A stretch of DNA of 64,000 nt from Ascidiella aspersa (lineage: Eukaryota): NCBI GenBank assembly GCA_963924565.1, contig OZ004607.1, positions 23,994,001-24,058,000 on the forward strand, in the 5' to 3' direction. Both the position numbers and the translations under genes were made by a program. This document shows, in pieces, positions 7,485-61,219 of this stretch (position 1 is its first letter; every line of letters starts with the position of its first letter). Under the pieces are notes generated by a model. It was given only the letters and a program-made list of their open reading frames with translations. It searched no databases and had not been told where the DNA came from.

Positions 7485-9282
7485 TCACTTCCAGGATATT
7501 GATGGAAACATTTTTAAAAACTTGCTGAAAAATTTAGTTTTACTTCCTTTATTGTATTCATCTGATACAGATTTCTTACAATACTTAAAAAACAGATTGT
7601 AAGCCTTGGCATGTACTTCTTGCAAACAAATGGTACCCCGAATGTTACAGGCCACCTCAAAGACATCGGATGCTTCTTTACAAGCCAAGAACATTTGTCT
7701 TTTCAACATTATAATTGCAACACAAACAAATACTTCAAATGTATAGTTTGTTTCTTTCACTAAAGGATTATTAAATCGAGATTTTCCTTCATCATTCATA
7801 ACCTGCAACAAACATTTAACCAGTTATTATTGCCTGTAAATTATATATATATATAATATACATACTATGTAAAAAATAATGATACAAGGTGTCACCATAA
7901 TGATTTATAAACATAATTAAACAACAAATATACGTAACAAGGTGGCTAAAAATTACCTCTATTCGAAGCTGAGTATCTTTTGCTGTTACTGCAGCAGCAG
8001 AGTCTAGTTCCAAGTGGTTGGACTGGGCCATTTCAAAATATTGAATAGATTCATCGTAGTCAAACTCGCGTTTAAATGAGACCAACAGCCATCGATGACA
8101 AAATATCAAATCCGCAACATTGCAGTTTGATAAATGGCTTGAAAATACACTTCAGATGTTATTTTTAGCATTGAATGACTGAATAGCAAAGATTATGAAT
8201 CACCTTAAGTTACTCACACAGCATTACTTTATATTGGCAATGTAATAAATATATACATACCTGTACAAATTTGGCTCAAGATCTTTCAGCAAACTTTGTA
8301 CCAGTTCCATTTTTTCTACCATGCCATTTTCATCAAAATCTTGTTCAATTCGTTCCATGTGATGAGTAAAGCACCAGAATGCATCAACTTCACACTCCAT
8401 AGCAACCAAAAATCTGGTCAAGATGTCGTTCATGCCCTATACACAAATAAATTAAAATGAATACTTTTTTGGTAAATAAAATACATTATATTATTGAAAA
8501 AAGTGTTTTACATTTAAAACAAATTTGAGTTTTACCTGTACATATCCTATTGTTGGATGAAAAAATCCAAAAGTTATTAGGATGTCTCTCATTTTTCTCT
8601 TATGATCTTCAGGTGCTTCTTTGAAATATTCATGATTTAAATCAGTCCTAGGAATGTCCTTGTCAATTACCCTGTACCATGATGAAGGGGTTTGGTCCAT
8701 TTTCTCTTTCCATGCATAAGTTTTTGCCATGTCTATGTGGGTAGAATCTTTTATTGAATCAGTAGGTCTAAATGGGGGCAAGTCCACTGACATAAAGTCT
8801 GCTTGTGGAACAGAAGACAAGGCAATTTCTTCGTTTAAATTCTCTCCATCACTGTCTCCCATGTACATCTGCCATCTTAACTTAAGAGCATGGTACTTAT
8901 AATGGTGCTCAATGTCAAAGTCTGCCCTCTCTCTTTCTGTGGAGCTCATAGGATACAAACCAAAAATAAATGACCAAACAGATTTTCGGATTTTCGGGTC
9001 ACAGCCACCATGAAACAAGTCTTGTCGAAGCTTTTCCTCTTGAACAACTCTACCATCGACATCAAAATACTGCAAATATTGGTCTTTGGTCAACTGTTGA
9101 AATTGTGGTTTTAAAGAATTTACTTCATCTTTATCAGAAATGTCGAGTTGTTTTGGTGTTACCATTTCAAAGGTACTTATTCTGCGTTTTACATCTGGCT
9201 GTGCAAAGCATGCATCATCACCAACCAGGACAAAACTATCAGATGACTTCTGTTTTTGATAAAAAACCTTCCGGTTATCCAT
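7485..9282 (-). CDS. TBC-domain Rab GTPase-activating protein, TBC1D15/16/17-like (4 exons, ~470 aa)
   Basis: Exons 9282-8536, 8436-8261, 8137-7957 and 7802-7485. Motifs: IRKSVWSFIFGLYP, arginine finger IDKDIPRTD, glutamine finger GYVQ|GMND, AFWCF and FCHRWLLVSFKREF. Confidence 0.9.
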
Positions 9283-45158: not shown

Positions 45159-47062
45159 TCAATGGTCTTCATCCCCAGAAGTAACATAAAGCCTTGGCTG
45201 CACCGGTGCTTGCGGAAACAATGGTGCTAACTTTACTTTGCCAAGCAAATTTAAATCTACCTTGCGATTAACCACACATCCTTGAATGGTTTGAACTATA
45301 AGTTGACAGAGCATTGGCAGCACGCAAAACTTTTGAATATGGGGGTTGGTTTCTAAAAAATCCCAGATGACATCCTCCAAACCGGAATCTCCACACACAT
45401 GCTTACAAACACCAATTTGGGACTCCTTGGTTAATCCAGTTACATAGACAACATATGAAGGCCTATACTCCTCAGCCATTTCATAAAATTCTCTATGCCT
45501 GCAAGTGATCGCTTTTCTAGCTTTGGGCCAAACATTGCCAAGCATTAAGTTCTTAATGTGAACATCAGGAAATTGCCGACCAACTGATTGTGGGACTGGG
45601 CCCGGCTTTGAGAAAGCATCGGTATTACATTCATCCAAACCATCGAGGATGATCAATAGTTCTTTTCCTTCACCAAAATTTTCAAGGACATCACTTGTCC
45701 AAGAAGTGTCTTGTTCCCAATTTCCAGTCATTCCAATGGTGATAAAGTTAATTAAGGTAACAGGTTTGGTAAAATCTATATCAGCCACACAAATATGGAA
45801 GATAAACCTCTTGTCATTCATCACTCCGTTTGAGCGGATTTCAGTTAGTAGCATTTGAGTAAGTGCAGATTTGCCAATGCCAGCTTCTCCAATGATTACC
45901 ACATTAAATGCAAGTTTATCAAGTAAACGCTCCACTTTTTTGTCAGATTCAGTATTTTCTGTCCCTTTCATCATCTTATACATATTTCTTGCCATTTCAA
46001 TGTCATGGCGCCTTGGAGCAAACATAGATTCAAAACTCTGATCGGCTGCATCAGCAGTTACATGACGCATTCCTAATAAACAAATTATAAACAAAAGAGT
46101 TAATAGATTGTATAGCAATTTAAAACAAAGTCTATAAAATATATTTTTTATGTAGATTTGTCTGTCCGTCCGTCGCTTTGTTTATTGCAAGATAAAACTG
46201 GAGTGGAGTAAGTGAGACCGAGCAGCAAAAGCCAGATTTAAGATAATACATTTTAGCCAGACGATTAGAAATTTAGTTACACTTACTAGCATGTGGTATA
46301 ATAACATATATTTACTGACAGCTATCAAAAAATAAATTTGGCCAAAACAATTCTGGTTTTACTGTTATTGTGTGAAAATTTTGCGTCAATACATGACACT
46401 ATCAGTGCCATTTTTGGCACTTAGCGGACATGATCAGTGCTTAACAGTAAATAGACAATAAGCTTTGCTGTTTTACAATTGCTAGCCTCACTACATAAAT
46501 GCAAATAATTAAATATCATATGATATAAAACTTAAATTTAACAGTCCTAGTTTATTGTAACAATAATAACTTTACACCGCAGGTAAAACACCAGTAGACA
46601 ATTTTTTTTTTTTATCATGTTGAGTTTAAAGCGACATAAAAATTATAAATAGCCTATTTATCCTAGGCAACATCAAGTATTTTATAGAATAACTATATAT
46701 TAACAAGAGTTGTCACTTACTTTCAATCATGTCAAACAGTTGAACTAAAACTTTTTCATCTAAAACAAAACATACAAACATAAGTACTTTATAACATTAA
46801 GCCATCCATGTTAATAGCAGCTATCCAATACCAGTATTTCACACACCTTTTTGGTACATATTTACTGGTTATATTTTTGAAAATTATTTACTTATTTGTC
46901 CAAGACTAATTCAGATCTATGTGTTCTAATTTTTTCGAGATTGCTCTGAAATAAAACTCACTGTATATTCCAAACGAATAAAGTAATTGAAATTAAAAAA
47001 AGTTTAACATAACAGTTTATAACATATTTACCTTTTTTCATTGCTGGTTGCTTTTTCGGCAT
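45159..47062 (-). CDS. NACHT-domain (NLR-like) NTPase, apparently without death-fold or LRR domains (~327 aa)
   Basis: Exons 47062-47032, 46759-46721 and 46072-45159 join in frame. Walker A GEAGIGKS, Walker B LLIILDGLDE, sensor-1 AITCR and helical-domain-1 motif FCVLPMLCQLI. Confidence 0.85.
46131..46687 (+). mobile_element. Decayed non-autonomous Helitron in the NACHT gene intron
   Basis: 5' TCTATAAAATATA followed by the GTCTGTCCGTCCGTC microsatellite. The 3' CCTAGGCAACATCAAGTATTTTATAG is a degenerate version of the terminus at 3886-3914. A third 3' end lies at ~49066-49096. Confidence 0.5.
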
Positions 47063-54650: not shown

Positions 54651-57600
54651 TTATCGTAAAAAGGCGTTTGGTAGCAGACCCCTGAACGAGGAACAGAAAC
54701 CGGATATTATGTTCGCGATTACATTCGAATAAAGCAACGGGTTGAGAGCGCTATTCACGGGCAGCAACAGTCCAGCACTCGCCACATATGCCTCCGGTGG
54801 CAAGTCCACACTAGCCAAACTTATGTATCCCATGAGGCTAATAGGAATCCAACAAGCAAAGTCGGTCATAATAAGCCGCGAGATACGCTTCTGCATCTCA
54901 CTGCTTGGGTCCTTGTTTCTCGCCATATTCATCCGCGAACTGCGTTTGTAAATCAGCACGTAAGCAGTCACGATATACAGGAAGGTAACGAAGTTGACTG
55001 TGATTAGCATGGTTGAGTAATGCCAGGCCTGGCTGGAAAAAAGCCGAGGCATGCAAACGCTAGTTTCACCGTAGTAACCGATTTCTCTTTCAATAAAGTT
55101 GAAAGGAAGCTTGTCGCGCACTATGTCTTTCGCCTTGTACCACGATGACACGTTTTTGCTGATAAGTCGACCAGCCAACGCTGTAATGTTTTGTCGCGAA
55201 ACCTCGTCTTTGTCGAAAAGCTCGTTCGGGAACCAGACGGTGGATACGAAATATCCCGAGTCAAAGTGGATAAGGGGAATCACCGCCAAAGTTCCCGCAA
55301 CTAGCCAGCATAACGTTAACATGTACACAATTCGACTTGGTCGAAAATGTTGTGTGAGAAAGGGCCGATATACTGATACTAAGCGATAGGTTGCCATGGT
55401 GGTCATCGTCAAAACAGAGGCCTCAGACGAAACCACCACCATCACTCCGAGAATAGAGCACATCATACTAGAACGCCACTTTTTGTCAGCGAGACAATAA
55501 TGTCCGGAAAATTCGATTCCTTTGCTAACGGTTGCAATCAAATATACTCCCATTAAACAGTCGGACGCAGAAAGGCTAATAACCATCAGTTTAGAACACT
55601 TAGCTACAGCATTATTCTTTTTTTCAACGATTAATTGTCTCGCTGTAGAAATAAAAACAACCATGTTGCCAATAATTGCAATAATTCCCATTATCCAAAA
55701 CATGACTCGAAAAAAGGGATTCGCTATCAGCTCGTATGGGTCGGAAAATAGCGAAACGCACTCATCGCTTCCGTCCTTGCAATCCTGAACTCCATTTTCC
55801 CGAAAGTTTGCATCTATTGAAATAGGCTCCCCGTTGTCACAGTAAAACCGTTTTTTGCACAACTCTCGACTTTCATCCAACCCATTTTCACAATCCTTAA
55901 TCGCATCACAACGAAATTGAATGTCAATGGAAACTTTAGCTTTTTCGTCACAGTAAAATCGGGACTCGTAACAGCGAGATACGTCTTCGTCTGTTCCGTC
56001 GTCGCAGTCGATTGTTCCGTCGCAAACTCCAGATATGTCGATACTTACCAGACCTTTACTTGGACAGAAGAATCGCATCGGACAATTCCTCTCGTCACAT
56101 AGGGTACAGTTAGTTTTGTGATAAGTGCTGAGTGAATAGTAGTATGAATCAGCTTCCGGGATGCCGTCACAAACGGCTTTATTGTCCGGAAGGGGAAAAA
56201 CTCTTGGTGCAACGGTGTTGAAGCCCGATATACAAGGGTCATCGCAGAACGATGGAGGGTTTGGGCAGTTGCATTCGTCCTCATATAGCAAGCAAGTAGG
56301 GCGCCCGTCGCATTTTAGGGCCTTTGTTCCACTTCGGCAATAAACTGCGTCGTGAAGTTGCCGCTGGTTTTTTTTTTGATAACAGAATCGTAAGTTGGAT
56401 TCGTTCGCACAAGCAATTGACTCATTGCATATTACCGATTTTACCTTAACGCAGTCATGAGCGTGAAGACATGGCATGTACTCAGTCGGACAAGCGCGGT
56501 TAAAATTGCCCAGTATCGCGTTACAAGTGGATTGATTGCCGCACAGGCACTCGTCGGACAAATCATGGCAATCAACGATGCCGTCGCAAACTTGCCCAGT
56601 TGAAATTATATTTATTCCGTCCAAGCATTGGAAACATTTAAAAGACCCATTCACAAAACATAAATCGGACTTGTCGGCGCACTGGGCTACGTCATCGAAA
56701 AGGTTAATCTGTGGTAGAAGGCATTGGCCAGCCCGGGCCAACCCAGCACATCTGAAGCCCAGCCCTTGCACCTGCTCGTCACTTTCGTCTGGGCAGGTTC
56801 GAAACAACTCCGAACTGCCGTCGCAAAAGTAGCGATTGCTAATGAACGTTTTGCCATCTTCGCATGAAAACAACTCGTTGCAGTGCTTAGTCGAGACATC
56901 GCAGGAGGGCGCCGCGCACAACCTGCCGTTCACGTGACAGGAGGTTAAATTTTGTGAACAAGTTTGTGTAGTAGCGCAGTGTGTGCTCGTTTTTTTAAAA
57001 TACATATGATCAATGTCTGGGTCGCATCGACTCACAGCCACTGAGCACTTGTCGCACCAGATCCATGACGTCACACAAGGTTCGTCGCTGGCGTCATCGC
57101 AGTCCGAATATCCGTCAGACACCCACTGAGACAAGATGCAACGTTGAAGCGGAACAGTCGCGTTCTTACCCTCTTGGTGGTTAAATATAAGCCCACATCG
57201 TGCATGGTTTCCAACACACAACTCACAGTTGGCCTCATCAAACCCGTCTTTACAATCAGCTTTGCCGTCACAAAAAGCCCTACGTGAAATAATTGTTCGG
57301 TCGGGGCATTTCTCAGTAAATTTATTTGCACTGCAATTAAACTCATCACTCCAATCCCAGCACGAATTCTTTCCGTCGCAAAGGCCAAGTGGTTGACCGA
57401 ATACATTAGGTTGTAAGCAGGCGCGTCCCCTGCAATTCCCGTGTTTATTGCAAGCGCATTCAAATTCGTTTTCCCCGCACTTACACTTAAGCTCGTCACT
57501 CCAATCACCGCAATCGTTTAAGCCGTTACATAATAGGTCTTTAGTTATGCAACCGCTGGGTGGGTAACACGTGTTTGTACTGCGACACTTGCAACGAAAA

Positions 57601-59184
57601 TTTTCGGTTGGGCATTCGCAGTCGATATTTTCGTCTGAACGATCACTGCAATCTACGATCCCGTCACAGACTTGTCTGGTGGAGATTATGTTCTTATCCT
57701 GTAAGGGCTTTTGCCGAGAAAAATGGCAAGTTTTCGATTGATAGCAGTGGCACATAAAAATTTCTTCTTGCTTAAACTGACATCCATTCTCATCGCTCCA
57801 GTCGCCACAGTCGTTTCTACCATCACACCTCTTCGAAATATCAATACAAGCCGACTCTGCAATGCAGGTGTGGCCATCATGGCAATCGCAACGGAATCTT
57901 TCTGCGAGACATTCACAGCCTTTTTCATCTGAACGATCAGAACAGTCGTAACGAAAGTTGCACTTCAAAGTTTCATGATAGCAACCGATTTCAGATAAAC
58001 AGGAATAATTGTGGTGGCAATCACAAGAAGAGAAACGACTGGGGCAGGTGCAATTTATCTCGTCGCTCCAATCGCCACAGTCGTTCCTTCCATTACACAC
58101 AAGTAAAGACTCAATGCAAGGGTTAAATACGAAGCAGGATTGCGACGCATAACAGGCACATTGAAATTTACTGCTCGGGCATATACACCCCTTTTCGTCA
58201 GACCAATCACCACAATCGTTCATACCATTACAAACCATGTTTTGCCCCACGCACCCATAGGTACTTTGAGCGAAAAGCTGAAATTGGTCATTTTTATGCC
58301 AATCACATTGAAAAACGTGCGCTGGGTAGGTGTAGTTTCTGTTCGGTGGATCGTCCGAACACACATCGTTTCCATTGCACAGGCCAATCGCATTAACGCA
58401 ACCTTTTCCGTATGTGCAATTTCTGTTTTTGTAGCATTCACACTCTATATGCCCATAGGGACAAGAAATACAGCCTTTCTCGTCGCTCCAATCGCCACAG
58501 TCGTTGTAGCCGTCGCACACACGTCCGGTAAGAATGCAGCCTGTATTACTGCAAGGGAGCGTTCCGTAACATTGGCATTGGAACAAGTTAGCGTTGCACG
58601 AGCAGTTTTTTTCGTCCTCCCATTCACCACAATCGTTGTAACCGTCGCACTTTCGATCTACCGGGACGCAAGGGGGTGAGTATGTTTGACAGCTCTTCGT
58701 CTTGTGGCAGTTGCACGTCACGTTAGGTTCCAAACAAGTGCAGTTGGAATCTTGTGGATTTAACATTATGTTGCACAACGGGGGTGTTGGACCTAATAAT
58801 AAAAAAATAAAAATACTTCAAATTAACTACAACCTAATCGATAGAAAACGTTAAACTAAAAAAAATAGGCTATAGCCTAAGTAGTTAAACATCGTACTAT
58901 TCTGTTTTCATAACTAGAAAAAATAAATTTTCTTAAATACTTTTTTTTTCACTTATTGCATATATATATAATATATATCAACAAAAAACTGAAACCCATT
59001 TTATTGCTTGTGTAACTTTTCACCTATCAGTCTGCAATTCTACAGTTAGACCAATGTATAGGTTACAAAAGTAAACGTTAGCAAACGACTTACTTTTATA
59101 TGAAGAAGTGTTGTCACTTGAACAAAGACAAAAGCTGAACATTAAAAACACCAAAAACCTAAATATGTACCACCCGGGTGCCAT
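54651..59184 (-). CDS. Rhodopsin-class GPCR, RXFP/GRL101-like 7TM, with ~21 LDL-receptor class A modules and no LRRs (2 exons, ~1410 aa)
   Basis: Signal-peptide exon 59184-59094 (MAPGWYIFRFLVFLMFSFCLCSS...) splices in phase 1 to a single exon 58792-54651. Repeated CDGxxDCxDWSDE modules. 7TM motifs FRVMFWIMGIIAIIGN, LSASDCLMGVYL, SEASVLT, MTDFACWIPI and PVNSALNPLLY. Confidence 0.93.
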
Positions 59185-61219
59185 TTTGCATTCTAGGCCT
59201 ATTCGTAGATCCATCATCATGCAAAAATCTAAAAAACATTCACACTAAACACACCAACGAAACTAGTAGTAACAAACTCGTAGTAAATTTCAACAAGTTA
59301 ATAACAGATGGGACGCAATATAAGTGATGTGATGTTTTGATTTACTTCCAAATAGCAGTTATTATGTGCAAATAGAGGATGTAAATTGTAGAAGGTATTT
59401 TTGTTTGACTTAAGCCGCCTCGTTTAGATCGTGAAGGCACTTAAGTAAACGAAGATGTTAGTAAAAATACTATTGATAGTGTAACTATTTAATTTGTTAA
59501 TTCTACTGGCGTTAGTCAAACAGACCTGTGCCCCACAAAAAATGTTAGCCTCACCAACGTTTAAAATACAGTACAGCGATAATACGGATATCACGCAGCC
59601 CACAATTTTACATCACAAAACTAAAAAAATATATAGCTCGCAGCCCACTGTAGAATGATAAAAACCTTACATATGGGCCGCGGTCCACAGTTTGCCGACC
59701 TCTGCTTACACCAAAAAACAACAATCTTATAAACTTACTTTGACGTGGGACAAAATTTTAATTGTTTCTCGGAAAAGCTGTAACAAAATGAAAAAAGGAC
59801 CAATGTTCTTGCAATTTAGTCTGAGTTTATTTTCATCATTGCACGACATATGACGTCACAATCTATCGTAAAAGTCGTTTTGTCGCATTATTTTTTTAAG
59901 GGCCGCATAATGACGCTGATGGGAGTGGGGGATAGGAAATTGTTCAGACTGGGAATGAGAAGTCTACGTAAAAAAACAAGCAACCTCAAGAAGTATAGTG
60001 TGCTCGTTGAACGTGCGCGCTAATAACGTGAGGCACGAAGCGCTGGCCCACTAAAATATTGGGACATTAAATATATTGAATGTAATCATGTGGCACTATA
60101 TAAAGACAATTTGTATTAATTCTCAAAAAGCTTTCACACAACCGTGCTTCATCAGGTTATAGTAGCAAAAACGAATACGGCCTTTGACAAATACGGCCAT
60201 TTATTATTTATAATGATAAATCGTCATACGTATAGGCCAGCACTTGTTAACCAGTGCCCCATGGAAGGTTGATGGGTACGCCGCACGTAAACATACAAAA
60301 CAATTAGCTCATTGAACATATAGAGTAGATGAATTACGCAATTATTGGACCTACGTAACGAAAAACTTAACTTCGAGTGAAATAACCTGCATGTTACCCA
60401 AATATTTCGCGCCGCCACGTTTTCAGACACACAAACCACAAAAGTTTGCGTCAAGCGCATCATTATTGTGCTTTTAATTTGTTACAATTAAAATTGGAGA
60501 AGACCATTTACTTACGATGTCATGACAACATATTAAAGTATTTCACATTCGCGCGAAGCGCAAAATGCCGGATTTGAAGTGGCACCAGATGAAAAAGCGA
60601 CTAACATTGTATAATAACACGTTTGTGCGAAACTTGGCAAGTATTATATTCTTACCGAAACTAGGAATCCCATGATACGTTGCTGTTGATTTTAAATGAC
60701 AAAAAGGTCAAAAATACGTAATTACATAGAGTGCCTATCATTATATTAATAAACATGCAAGTTTTTTAGTTAATTATAAGCAAAATCAAAAATTAGATAA
60801 ACGGTAGTTTTGGAAGACTAAGATTAGATGGTAACTAGGATATCGAAACCTAAATAAACGTTTCTTATAAACAATAGGAGTAACAGAACACTATTTAATA
60901 CGCTATAGTTTTGATAATAATTACCTTCATTGTCTTATTATGTTTAAAATATCGTTCTTACCAATGCAGAACACATAACAGAATTTAAATTCTACTTAAT
61001 GAAATCGGTAAATAAATTAATAAAGAACAATAATTTAATTAAAAAGTGCAAAGGGTGAGTTTATATTCTTGTTTATATATTTTATCCAGTAATTTCATAA
61101 TTGCAAATTATTATTAAATGTATTTGCATAGGTATATATTTAAGCGACTTTCAAGTAAATTGAAATAAAACAAGTAAAATCTAAAGAGATTTTGCACCGG
61201 CATCCAAGTTTCACCACGT

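What the first reader, a model, noticed from the sequence alone, without database searches (positions are those of the whole stretch)
57330..58792. GPCR ectodomain begins with about ten 8-cysteine LDLa variants (extra CxC-x5-C loop)
Seen: most of the N-terminal ~10 modules follow C-x4/5-F-x-C-x-C-x5-C-x4/6-C-x6-C-DG-xx-DC-x-D(W/R)SDE-xx-C, e.g. CPSSKFQCACYASQSCFVFNPCIESLLVCNGRNDCGDWSDEINC, which has 8 Cys. A few are degenerate. Established: canonical LDLa has 6 Cys in 3 disulfides. Seen: the acidic Ca2+ cage is retained, the inserted loops vary (YGTLP, YKNRN, YASQS, HHNYS, HDGHT, YQSKT, RSTNT, NKHGN), and Trp replaces the usual Gly in DGSDE. Inference: a fourth disulfide staples a variable loop onto each module, giving an array of diversified ligand-binding surfaces on a GPCR, possibly a chemosensory or immune-type sensing receptor.
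Basis: partly seen in the sequence, partly recalled or inferred. Interest (0 to 1): 0.8.

Follow-up and report, generated by a model that had tools for sequence, protein, structure and literature searches.

The report
Eight-cysteine LDLa modules on ascidian GPCR
This is an intact sea-squirt gene of the known, still orphan "LDL-repeat GPCR" family. Its outer repeats carry a previously unremarked extra cysteine pair that most likely forms a fourth, structural disulfide, not a hypervariable ligand loop.

Summary
A two-exon minus-strand gene (signal-peptide exon, then one 1,380-codon exon, 58792-54651) encodes about 12 LDLa-type modules, a Cys-rich stalk and a relaxin-receptor-like 7TM, with no LRRs.

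- **Module pattern.** Seven of the first ten modules have 8 Cys, in the pattern C-x6-C-x-C-x5-C-x4/6-C-x6-C-x5-C-x8-C.
- **Family.** It is known: the Ciona "LDLRR-GPCRs" of Kamesh et al. 2008. That paper does not mention the extra Cys pair, although one of its own Ciona sequences shows it.
- **Distribution.** The pair is family-wide. It occurs in at least 16 paralogous loci of this genome and in Phallusia, Clavelina and Ciona. It was absent from 1,292 non-tunicate LDLa modules and from all non-tunicate-type hits of a profile search of 1.84 billion proteins.
- **Pairing.** Cys co-loss statistics, an AlphaFold model and structural alignment place the extra pair in a 9-residue insert between canonical C2 and C3, paired with each other. 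In 52 modules this pair persists while canonical C1-C3 is lost.
- **Variability.** The loop varies in length and sequence between module types. Between positional orthologues it evolves no faster than other loops (dN/dS 0.24-0.42, against 0.53-0.61 for the C3-C4 segment).

The "hypervariable stapled ligand loop" reading is therefore only partly supported. This scan had already noted the family elsewhere in this genome.

The parts
59094..59220 (-). Putative exon 1. It has an ATG at 59220 (a second in-frame Met lies 12 codons in), a hydrophobic signal-peptide-like stretch, and a donor AAAA|GTAAGT after 59094 (phase 1).
   Evidence: Sequence read; ORF listed. The phase fits exon 2: A + GT gives a Ser codon. 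RNA reads do not confirm it, since no reads cross the junction.
58793..59093 (-). Putative intron of 301 nt, AT-rich, GT...AG, with a polypyrimidine tract before the acceptor ttattattag.
   Evidence: Inferred from splice consensus and reading frame only.
54651..58792 (-). Exon 2: a continuous coding frame of about 1,380 codons covering the whole mature receptor. The stop codon is at 54651-54653.
   Evidence: Pfam.
58602..58736 (-). Module M1, 8 Cys (extra loop HKTKS).
   Evidence: 32 bits against the family module HMM.
58470..58598 (-). Module M2, 8 Cys (loop YGTLP).
   Evidence: 45.6 bits.
58323..58463 (-). Module M3, 7 Cys (loop YKNRN). The C-terminal acidic motif is degenerate and the last Cys is missing.
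   Evidence: 23.6 bits; HMM positions 1-38 only.
58185..58322 (-). Module M4. The insert is retained, but both extra Cys are replaced (Trp and Phe) and C1 is lost; C2, C3, C4, C5 and C6 are kept.
   Evidence: pattern -b--efgh, 36.9 bits. Phallusia P0006 residues 359-405 carry the same Cys-to-Trp change.
58050..58181 (-). Module M5, 8 Cys (loop YASQS). This is the module that was modelled.
   Evidence: AF2 pLDDT is 87.7. It aligns to ApoER2 LA1 (3a7q_B) at rmsd 0.8 A over 35 of 35 target residues.
57915..58046 (-). Module M6, 8 Cys (loop HHNYS). It has DRSDE instead of DWSDE, and CNF instead of CDG.
   Evidence: 31.9 bits.
57780..57911 (-). Module M7, 8 Cys (loop HDGHT).
   Evidence: 43.1 bits.
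57618..57779 (-). Module M8, 6 Cys of the alternative kind. Canonical C1 and C3 are both absent, the extra C-x-C-x5-C is kept (loop YQSKT), and there is a longer spacer before C4.
   Evidence: pattern -bcd-fg(h).
57483..57614 (-). Module M9, 8 Cys (loop RSTNT).
   Evidence: 49.2 bits.
57333..57479 (-). Module M10, 8 Cys (loop NKHGN). The C3-C4 spacer is longer.
   Evidence: 30.5 bits.
57225..57332 (-). Module M11, a reduced LDLa with 4 Cys (C2, C4, C5, C6). Both the C1-C3 pair and the extra pair are absent.
57075..57224 (-). Terminal 'T' module of the array. In relatives it has the pattern abcde-g-; here both extra Cys are also lost, but the conserved IFN motif is kept.
   Evidence: by comparison with the T modules of L016, L018, L026, P0009 and Ciona ci0100130612.
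55716..57074 (-). Cys-rich stalk, conserved across the family. It holds degenerate LDLa remnants and three reduced LDLa-like modules just before TM1, then the hinge ...LFSDPYELIANP.
   Evidence: The same blocks are present in P0001, P0006, P0009 and P0024.
54654..55715 (-). Rhodopsin-class 7TM domain with a short tail; NPxxY is present.
   Evidence: Pfam 7tm_1. The best solved relative is relaxin receptor RXFP1 (7tmw, 8.1e-26), followed by LHCGR, FSHR and TSHR.

Best explanation
The locus is an intact member of the tunicate-specific, expanded and still orphan LDLRR-GPCR family: LDLa repeats fused without LRRs to a relaxin-receptor-like 7TM.

Its N-terminal array is built from a family-specific LDLa subtype. 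About 9 residues (x-C-x4-7-C plus one) are inserted between canonical C2 and C3.

- **Canonical disulfides.** The six canonical Cys (a, b, e, f, g, h) keep the standard 1-3, 2-5 and 4-6 pairings.
- **Extra pair.** The two inserted Cys (c, d) pair with each other and staple a short, partly helical excursion on the N-terminal lobe.
- **Role of the extra pair.** It is mainly structural. It can take over from the C1-C3 disulfide: 52 family modules have lost C1 and C3 together but keep c-d. It accompanies arrays whose modules are joined by one-residue linkers.
- **Ligand binding (inferred, not shown).** Binding is expected to use the conserved Ca2+/acidic cage and the neighbouring C3-C4 segment, as in other LDLa receptors, with many modules giving avidity. 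The 7TM would then signal as in LGR-type receptors.
- **Unknown.** Ligand, tissue and G-protein coupling.
For: **Gene and domains.**

**Family identity.**
- The closest proteins are tunicate LDLa+7tm_1 proteins: P0001 at 40%, Phallusia P0006 at 37%, Clavelina P0009 at 35%.
- The 7TM is nearest to RXFP1.
- Kamesh et al. 2008 (PMC2396169) describe the family.
- This genome has at least 42 related loci, mostly long single open frames.

**Extra pair is family-wide.**
- Of 241 near-full modules, 146 are abcdefgh, 52 are -bcd-fgh and only 2 are ab--efgh.
- A Ciona sequence in the 2008 supplement shows the same 8-Cys register.

**Connectivity.**
- Fisher co-loss: a-e odds ratio 274, p=4e-40; c-d odds ratio 42, p=2e-6; f-h p=2e-10.
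- g is never lost, and b only in 2 of 241 modules.
- Where c and d are lost, they are replaced by Trp and Phe with the loop kept (WIN M4, P0006).

**Structure.**
- AF2 model of M5: mean pLDDT 87.7, with strands at 5-7 and 22-24 flanking a helical turn at 9-13 inside the insert.
- VIA-align: model residues 1..44 map onto complete 35-residue canonical modules with 35 residues aligned, rmsd 0.8-1.6 A, Z 5-6. So a corresponds to C1, h to C6, and 9 residues are extra.
- Pfam's LDLa profile aligns only from profile position 14 onward in its best stretch.

**Structural rather than hypervariable.** dN/dS of the c-d loop is 0.24, or 0.42 with disjoint pairs. That is at or below the other loops and below the e-f segment at 0.53 / 0.61.

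**Restricted distribution.**
- None of 1,292 modules in 114 non-tunicate LDLa proteins is a true 8-Cys module.
- A profile of the N-terminal half, run against 1.84e9 representatives, gave 47 hits. Only tunicate-type proteins or fragments aligned over the full profile and carry the pattern.
Against: - No coordinates of the model were available, so the c-d S-S distance was not measured. The pairing is inferred by elimination and co-loss.
- Modules are related by descent, so the Fisher p-values overstate the number of independent events. There are perhaps 5-7 independent c-d co-losses.
- The spacing c-x4-7-d-x5-e-x6-f also mimics a canonical C1-C2-C3-C4 spacing, and my module HMM aligns canonical modules that way.
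- Expression is unproven. Only 7 reads landed in a 6% sample of the one RNA run of this species, and none crossed the predicted junction.
Confidence: 0.75

Rival explanations
1. The fourth disulfide exists to display a hypervariable loop, so each module offers a diversified ligand-binding surface, and the receptor is a chemosensory or immune-type recognition molecule that diversifies through these loops.
For: - The c-d loop is the only inter-Cys segment that varies in length (x4 to x7). Its columns have 3.4-3.9 bits of entropy between module types.
- The family is greatly expanded and clustered in this genome (earlier notes).
- Kamesh et al. 2008 report that Ciona ESTs for the family come mainly from blood cells.
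- Single substitutions in this loop distinguish very recent tandem duplicates, L006, L009 and L010.
Against: - Other non-core columns are just as variable.
- Between positional orthologues the loop's dN/dS is 0.24-0.42, no higher than the a-b, d-e or f-g segments and lower than e-f.
- No site class exceeds 1.
- Each module position keeps its own loop across paralogues.
- The AF2/VIA alignment places the insert between canonical C2 and C3, in the N-terminal half. From general knowledge of LDLa-ligand complexes, this is away from the Ca2+/acidic face that grips ligands.
Confidence: 0.2
2. A different connectivity and origin. The module is a canonical LDLa (c=C1, d=C2, e=C3, f, g, h) preceded by a duplicated C-x6-C hairpin (a, b), so the extra disulfide is a-b or some other rewired pattern.
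For: - The spacings c-d (x4-7), d-e (x5), e-f (x6), f-g (x5) and g-h (x8) match those of the canonical 6-Cys modules in the sister subfamily.
- The module HMM aligns those canonical modules onto c..h.
- The a-b spacing (x6) also equals a canonical C1-C2 spacing, so the N-terminal part looks like a partial duplication.
Against: - a is lost in 71 modules while b is kept in 70 of them, and a is co-lost with e (odds ratio 274). That excludes an a-b pair.
- The conserved F-x-C sits at b, as at canonical C2.
- AF2 pairs strand 5-7 (just before b) with strand 22-24 (starting at e).
- Structural alignment runs from residue 1, not residue 10, over complete canonical modules.
Confidence: 0.05
3. The frame is a decaying or unexpressed gene copy, and the odd Cys patterns in M3, M4, M8, M11 and the T module reflect erosion rather than function.
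For: - Three of the first ten modules, plus M11 and the T module beyond them, deviate from the full pattern.
- RNA support is almost nil.
- The family contains broken copies with in-frame stops.
Against: - There are 1,380 codons without a stop, with a signal-peptide exon in the correct phase, all 7TM hallmarks and NPxxY.
- The same deviant module types (6*, T, reduced) are conserved in other species, so they are designs rather than decay.
- Cys codons show dN close to 0 across paralogues.
Confidence: 0.05

Closest known systems
Ciona LDLRR-GPCRs (Kamesh, Aradhyam & Manoj 2008, BMC Evol Biol 8:129; PMC2396169)
   Same: - Tunicate lineage.
- Tandem LDL-A repeats at the N-terminus and no LRRs.
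- A 7TM most like INSL3/relaxin receptors.
- Lineage-specific expansion, and still orphan.
- A Ciona member in that paper's supplement shows the same 8-Cys register and the same terminal T module.
   Different: - The paper describes LDL-A as the usual six-Cys module and says nothing of an extra pair, the alternative 6-Cys form or the T module.
- Individual genes are longer, with 10-20 modules.
Canonical LDL receptor class A module (Pfam PF00057), as in LDLR, VLDLR, ApoER2, LRP1/2, RXFP1
   Same: - The fold: AF2 model against 3a7q_B, rmsd 0.8 A over 35 residues; RXFP1 LDLa 2jm4, Z 4.2.
- The six canonical Cys.
- F-x-C at C2 and I/V after C3.
- The CDG..DC.D.SDE calcium cage.
   Different: - A 9-residue insert between C2 and C3 carries two more Cys.
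- The C1-C3 disulfide is dispensable when the extra pair is present (52 modules).
- The aromatic residue usually found two positions before C4 is mostly K, Q or R here (column 28).
- Trp is frequent in D-W-SDE.
Type C LGRs: vertebrate RXFP1/RXFP2 and the Lymnaea receptor with tandem LDLa repeats plus LRRs (GR101_LYMST, as named by Kamesh et al. 2008)
   Same: - The 7TM is most similar to RXFP1 (8.1e-26).
- LDLa modules lie N-terminal to the 7TM.
- The snail receptor also has tandem LDLa repeats, according to PMC2396169.
   Different: - There is no LRR domain at all.
- In its place is a roughly 450-residue Cys-rich stalk with reduced LDLa-like modules.
- A relaxin-type ligand is therefore not expected, as the 2008 authors also argued.

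Membership tests
LDL receptor class A domain (PF00057) | Sequence match above Pfam's gathering score | tested here: met
   195.6 bits against a cut-off of 24.1, in 9 stretches. The best stretch covers only profile positions 14-37, so the N-lobe deviates.
LDL receptor class A domain (PF00057) | Six Cys in the canonical register, with the conserved acidic D-x-S-D-E calcium cage | tested here: met
   Positions a, b, e, f, g and h are present in 7 of the first 10 modules. The cage residues are conserved in 96-123 of 124 non-redundant family modules.
LDL receptor class A domain (PF00057) | LDLa fold | tested here: met
   This is a prediction, not an experiment. The AF2 model has pLDDT 87.7. All top Foldseek and VIA matches are LDLa modules, with TMq about 0.7, Z 5-6 and rmsd 0.8-1.6 A over 35-36 residues.
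LDL receptor class A domain (PF00057) | Exactly three disulfides (1-3, 2-5, 4-6) and Ca2+ binding | not testable with these tools
   Co-loss statistics agree with the three canonical pairs plus a fourth, c-d. Neither the chemistry nor Ca2+ binding was measured.
Tunicate LDLRR-GPCR family (Kamesh et al. 2008) | N-terminal LDL-A repeats, single or tandem, with no LRR | tested here: met
   Pfam finds LDLa and 7tm_1 only. There are 12 modules by the family HMM.
Tunicate LDLRR-GPCR family (Kamesh et al. 2008) | 7TM region most similar to INSL3/relaxin receptors | tested here: met
   The best solved relative is RXFP1 (7tmw, 8.1e-26), ahead of LHCGR at 7e-21.
Tunicate LDLRR-GPCR family (Kamesh et al. 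2008) | Closest full-length relatives are tunicate proteins of the same architecture | tested here: met
   Phallusia mammillata P0006 and Clavelina lepadiformis P0009 both carry PF00057 and PF00001. Ciona ci0100130612 shares the stalk and hinge blocks. No tree with the Ciona set was built.
Type C LGR / relaxin family peptide receptors (RXFP1/2) | Leucine-rich repeat ectodomain between the LDLa module and the 7TM | tested here: not met
   There is no LRR family hit at E <= 0.01. The interval is a Cys-rich stalk.

The most novel reading that the evidence does not exclude
The 8-Cys module is a distinct, tunicate-born LDLa subclass. In it a new disulfide-stapled insert has become the primary N-lobe staple, which allows loss of the ancestral C1-C3 bond. 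Arrays that mix the 8-Cys, alternative 6-Cys and T modules would form the variable recognition part of a large repertoire of GPCRs, tens to more than a hundred genes, expressed in blood cells. That would be a non-Ig, non-LRR, GPCR-coupled recognition system in the sister group of vertebrates, with the insert contributing a second, module-specific binding surface.
Probability: 0.2. Interest if true: 0.65.

Novelty: new variant of a known kind. Interest (0 to 1): 0.42.

Why it matters
LDLa modules are among the best-studied small disulfide domains, and their six-Cys pattern is treated as invariant.

- **Evolution of disulfide frameworks.** A lineage-wide subtype with a fourth disulfide that can replace one of the ancestral three is a clean natural example of such a framework changing. 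It also explains why Pfam sees only part of each module here.
- **Practical use.** The finding gives a specific profile for annotating the very large orphan LDLRR-GPCR repertoires of ascidians. It also points ligand hunting at the acidic cage and the C3-C4 segment rather than at the new loop.
- **Limits.** It does not by itself reveal the function of the family, which has been orphan since 2008.

Tried and rejected
1. **Full-module profile for the large search.** A local trial showed that LRP2- and SORL1-type proteins with 11-35 canonical modules outscore the true relatives. I used a profile of the N-terminal half only (A1), which locally hit only the six tunicate proteins.
2. **First regex for the 8-Cys N-lobe.** It gave 22 'hits' in non-tunicate proteins. 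All were the previous module's last Cys plus a one-residue linker (C6-x-C1), so they were false. A stricter pattern left one chance match in 1,292 modules.
3. **Second batch of 20 paralogous loci.** The census therefore covers 25 of at least 42 loci.
4. **RNA evidence.** The one RNA run of the species gave 7 reads, with no junction reads. Expression and splicing remain untested.
5. **Naming the metagenome-derived homologues.** The clusters carry no names.
6. **Literature.** I searched for an LDLa with extra Cys or an extra disulfide, and for later work on LDLRR-GPCRs. Nothing relevant turned up beyond the 2008 paper.
7. **Joined protein.** All searches used exon 2 or parts of it.
8. **Model geometry.** The S-S distance in the AF2 model could not be read, because the tool returns no coordinates.


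Full report
**1. What is at the coordinates**

The minus strand of window 54651-58792 is one uninterrupted reading frame of about 1,380 codons. It starts directly after a splice-acceptor-like ttattattag at 58793-58794.

About 300 nt upstream lies a short ORF. Its ATG is at 59220 and it encodes a hydrophobic, signal-peptide-like sequence. It ends at a consensus donor, AAAA|GTAAGT, after 59094. The phases fit: one base from exon 1 plus GT from exon 2 gives a Ser codon. I therefore read a two-exon gene.

Everything was searched with exon 2 or parts of it.

Pfam finds only Ldl_recept_a (1.1e-58, 9 stretches) and 7tm_1 (8.4e-15), with no LRR. The finding's interval, 57330-58792, is exactly the first ten modules.

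**2.

I label the Cys of a module a to h. The common pattern is a-x6-b-x-c-x5-d-x4/6-e-x6-f-x5-g-x8-h.

- M1, M2, M5, M6, M7, M9 and M10 have all eight Cys.
- M3 has seven, and its acidic motif is degenerate.
- M4 keeps the insert but has Trp and Phe at c and d, and lacks a.
- M8 lacks a and e but keeps b-x-c-x5-d.

Modules are joined by one residue (h-x-a). That also occurs in ordinary LDLa arrays, for example perlecan-like P0012 and Saccoglossus P0014. DWSDE is likewise seen in ordinary 6-Cys modules of P0014 and P0015, so Trp at that position is not part of the novelty.

**3. The gene family is known**

- The best full-length relatives are proteins with PF00057 plus PF00001: P0001 (metagenome, 40%), Phallusia mammillata P0006 (37%) and Clavelina lepadiformis P0009 (35%).
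- The 7TM part is most similar to the solved relaxin receptor RXFP1 (7tmw, 8.1e-26), then to LHCGR, FSHR and TSHR.
- Kamesh, Aradhyam and Manoj (2008, PMC2396169) described exactly this architecture in Ciona as 'LDLRR-GPCRs'. They report 14 confirmed members with 1-10 LDL-A repeats, no LRR, relaxin-receptor-like TM regions, no known ligand, and ESTs mostly from blood cells.
- I found no later paper using that name.
- In this genome (G000, 308 Mb) the first 483 residues hit at least 42 separate loci. Most lie in open frames of 900-1,900 codons and many are in tandem clusters.
- Two earlier notes of this scan, on other parts of the genome, reached the same family assignment. One claims at least 133 copies. 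I did not recount.

**4. The extra Cys pair is a family trait that the 2008 paper did not mention**

That paper describes LDL-A as a roughly 40-residue module with six Cys, and contains no remark on additional Cys. Yet its own supplementary sequence ci0100130612 shows a-x6-b-x-c-x5-d-x10-e-x6-f-x5-g-x8-h.

I built a module HMM from 132 clear modules. I scanned 25 paralogous open frames of this genome plus six proteins from other tunicates or metagenomes. Of 241 near-full modules:

| Pattern | Count | Meaning |
|---|---|---|
| abcdefgh | 146 | full 8-Cys |
| -bcd-fgh | 52 | canonical C1 and C3 both missing, extra pair present |
| abcde-g- | 7 | conserved terminal 'T' module |
| ab--efgh | 2 | plain canonical six-Cys |

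Typical arrays read 8 8 8 6* 8 6* 8 6* 8 ... T, where 6* stands for -bcd-fgh.

A sister subfamily in the same genome (L018, L019, L020, L026, L027, L028) has arrays of ordinary six-Cys modules. It still ends with the same T module, whose N-lobe is of the C-x-C type. So the insert is old within the family, but not every member uses it throughout.

**5. Which Cys pair with which**

*Co-loss across the 241 modules.*

- a and e are lost together: 59 both lost, 12 a only, 3 e only; odds ratio 274, p=4e-40.
- f and h are lost together (p=2e-10).
- c and d are lost together: 6 both lost, 4 and 8 singly; several of the single cases are alignment slips in long loops; odds ratio 42, p=2e-6.
- g is never lost, and b only twice.

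This is the pattern expected for the canonical 1-3 (a-e), 2-5 (b-g) and 4-6 (f-h) bonds plus a new c-d bond. It excludes an a-b bond. Where c and d are lost, the loop stays and the positions become hydrophobic: Trp and Phe in M4 here, and Trp in the corresponding Phallusia module. The T module of this gene has also lost both.

The modules are related by descent, so the p-values overstate independence. I estimate five to seven independent c-d co-losses.

*Structure prediction.*

- AlphaFold2 on M5, with an alignment of 64 family modules, gave mean pLDDT 87.7. Strands lie at residues 5-7 and 22-24, and a helical turn at 9-13 inside the insert.
- All top structural matches are LDLa modules.
- VIA-align maps model residues 1..44 onto complete 35-residue canonical modules with 35 aligned residues. 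Examples are ApoER2 LA1 (3a7q_B, rmsd 0.8 A, Z 6.0), LRP CR7, megalin CR10 and RXFP1 LDLa.

So a corresponds to C1 and h to C6, and nine residues, the segment holding c and d, are extra. The tool returns no coordinates, so the S-S distance itself was not checked. The c-d bond is inferred by elimination, co-loss and the hydrophobic replacements.

*A rival I considered.* The spacing c..h also mimics a canonical C1..C6 spacing, and my HMM aligns the canonical subfamily that way. This hints that the insert arose by partial duplication of the C1-C2 hairpin. The co-loss data and the model both argue against c=C1 as the present-day structure.

**6. Is the loop hypervariable?**

*Between module types.* The c-d loop is the only segment with variable length: x4 in 21 modules, x5 in 28, x6 in 53, x7 in 39. 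Every other spacer is essentially fixed. Its columns have 3.4-3.9 bits of entropy, but so do most positions of the a-b, d-e and e-f segments. The conserved core is F6, G22, I/V24 and the cage (columns 30-42).

*Between positional orthologues in different paralogues (Nei-Gojobori).*

| Segment | dN/dS, 286 reciprocal-best pairs | dN/dS, 49 disjoint pairs with bootstrap interval |
|---|---|---|
| a-b | 0.46 | 0.33 |
| c-d | 0.24 | 0.42 [0.29-0.71] |
| d-e | 0.23 | 0.30 |
| e-f | 0.53 | 0.61 [0.44-0.97] |
| f-g | 0.22 | 0.36 |
| g-h | 0.11 | 0.13 |

The stapled loop is less constrained than the calcium cage. It is not faster than the other loops, and nothing exceeds 1.

The fastest single columns are 2, 27 and 33. 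Columns 27 and 33 flank C4, where, from general knowledge of LDLa-ligand complexes, ligands are gripped.

Each module position thus keeps its own loop. That fits a structural or position-specific role better than rapid diversification.

**7. Is the subtype found elsewhere?**

- Among the 114 non-tunicate proteins returned by the word search (LRP2, SORL1, perlecan-like and others), 1,259 of 1,292 modules are canonical and none is a true 8-Cys module.
- The claim rests on absence, so I ran the large profile search with a 32-column profile of the N-terminal half only (alignment A1). It found 47 proteins at E <= 1e-3 among 1.84 billion representatives.
- After fetching them, only P0006, P0009, P0021 and five unnamed metagenome fragments (P0124, P0132, P0152, P0160, P0162) either aligned over the whole profile or carried the register; most did both. 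These fragments resemble the tunicate proteins. All other hits are canonical arrays matched from profile position 9 or later, except P0133, P0149 and P0151, matched from position 4-5; none of them carries the register.
- Single isolated modules would sit near the detection limit, at about 36 bits.
- The solved structures matched by sequence are LRP2, VLDLR, LRP4, LDLR, LRP6 and LRP1, and they align to these modules only with gaps.
- Literature searches for an LDLa with extra Cys or a fourth disulfide found nothing relevant. The library misses most subscription journals, so this is weak evidence.

**8. How it most likely works**

*Shown.* An intact receptor gene of a known orphan family, and an array of Ca2+-cage-bearing LDLa modules with a family-specific insert.

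*Inferred.*

- The insert is stapled by a fourth disulfide that stabilises the N-lobe and can replace C1-C3.
- Ligands, probably basic surfaces of proteins or peptides, are bound by the acidic cages of several modules with avidity.
- The conserved stalk and the hinge before TM1 transmit binding to a relaxin-receptor-like 7TM.

Expression is unproven here. Seven reads were found in a 6% sample of one RNA run, and none crossed the junction.

**9. Verdict**

The gene is a new member of a known family. The 8-Cys LDLa, with its alternative 6-Cys derivative and T module, appears to be an undescribed variant of a very well-known domain, restricted as far as I can see to tunicate LDLRR-GPCRs.

Interest is moderate. 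It is a neat case of disulfide-framework evolution and a useful annotation handle, but not a new kind of system.

Noticed in passing
window 45159-46118 (-): A 319-codon ORF with a NACHT domain (Pfam PF05729, 7.6e-17) and a hydrophobic N-terminus. It is probably one exon of an NLR/STAND-type gene lying about 8.5 kb from the receptor gene.
   Followed up: partly
window 8491-9282 (-): A 263-codon ORF with a RabGAP-TBC domain fragment (PF00566, 1.3e-08). It is an exon of a TBC-domain gene.
   Followed up: partly
L019 (G000:C2:38570500-38577500), L028 (G000:C4:10716800-10725500), L027, L018, L026: A sister subfamily of the same GPCR family uses ordinary six-Cys LDLa modules. L019 has about 8 nearly identical tandem modules, and L028 has 20 in a 782-codon frame, which suggests very recent intragenic repeat amplification. 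These genes still end the array with the C-x-C-type 'T' module.
   Followed up: partly
L016 (G000:C1:30691900-30701500): A 1,907-codon open frame in which a block of modules (8, 8, abcdefg-, T, reduced module) occurs twice. This looks like an internal duplication of the end of the array, including the T module.
   Followed up: no
window 55047-55079: Three RNA reads match only these 33 bases and continue on both sides into unlike sequence (loose ends at 55047 and 55079). They may come from a paralogue's transcript or an unrelated RNA sharing a short stretch. Unexplained.
   Followed up: no
window about 55716-55760 (-); also P0001, P0006, P0009, P0024, P0027: A short hinge just before TM1 (LFS-x3-E-[LM]-I-[AS]-x-P) follows the last reduced LDLa-like module. 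It is conserved across species of the family and is a candidate for the element that couples the ectodomain to the 7TM.
   Followed up: no
window 57071-57508 (-), 58140-58679 (+) and other ORFs overlapping the LDLa region: Long alternative-frame and antisense ORFs of 145-179 codons overlap the repeat region. They carry no domain signal and are best taken as by-products of the repeat's composition, not genes.
   Followed up: no
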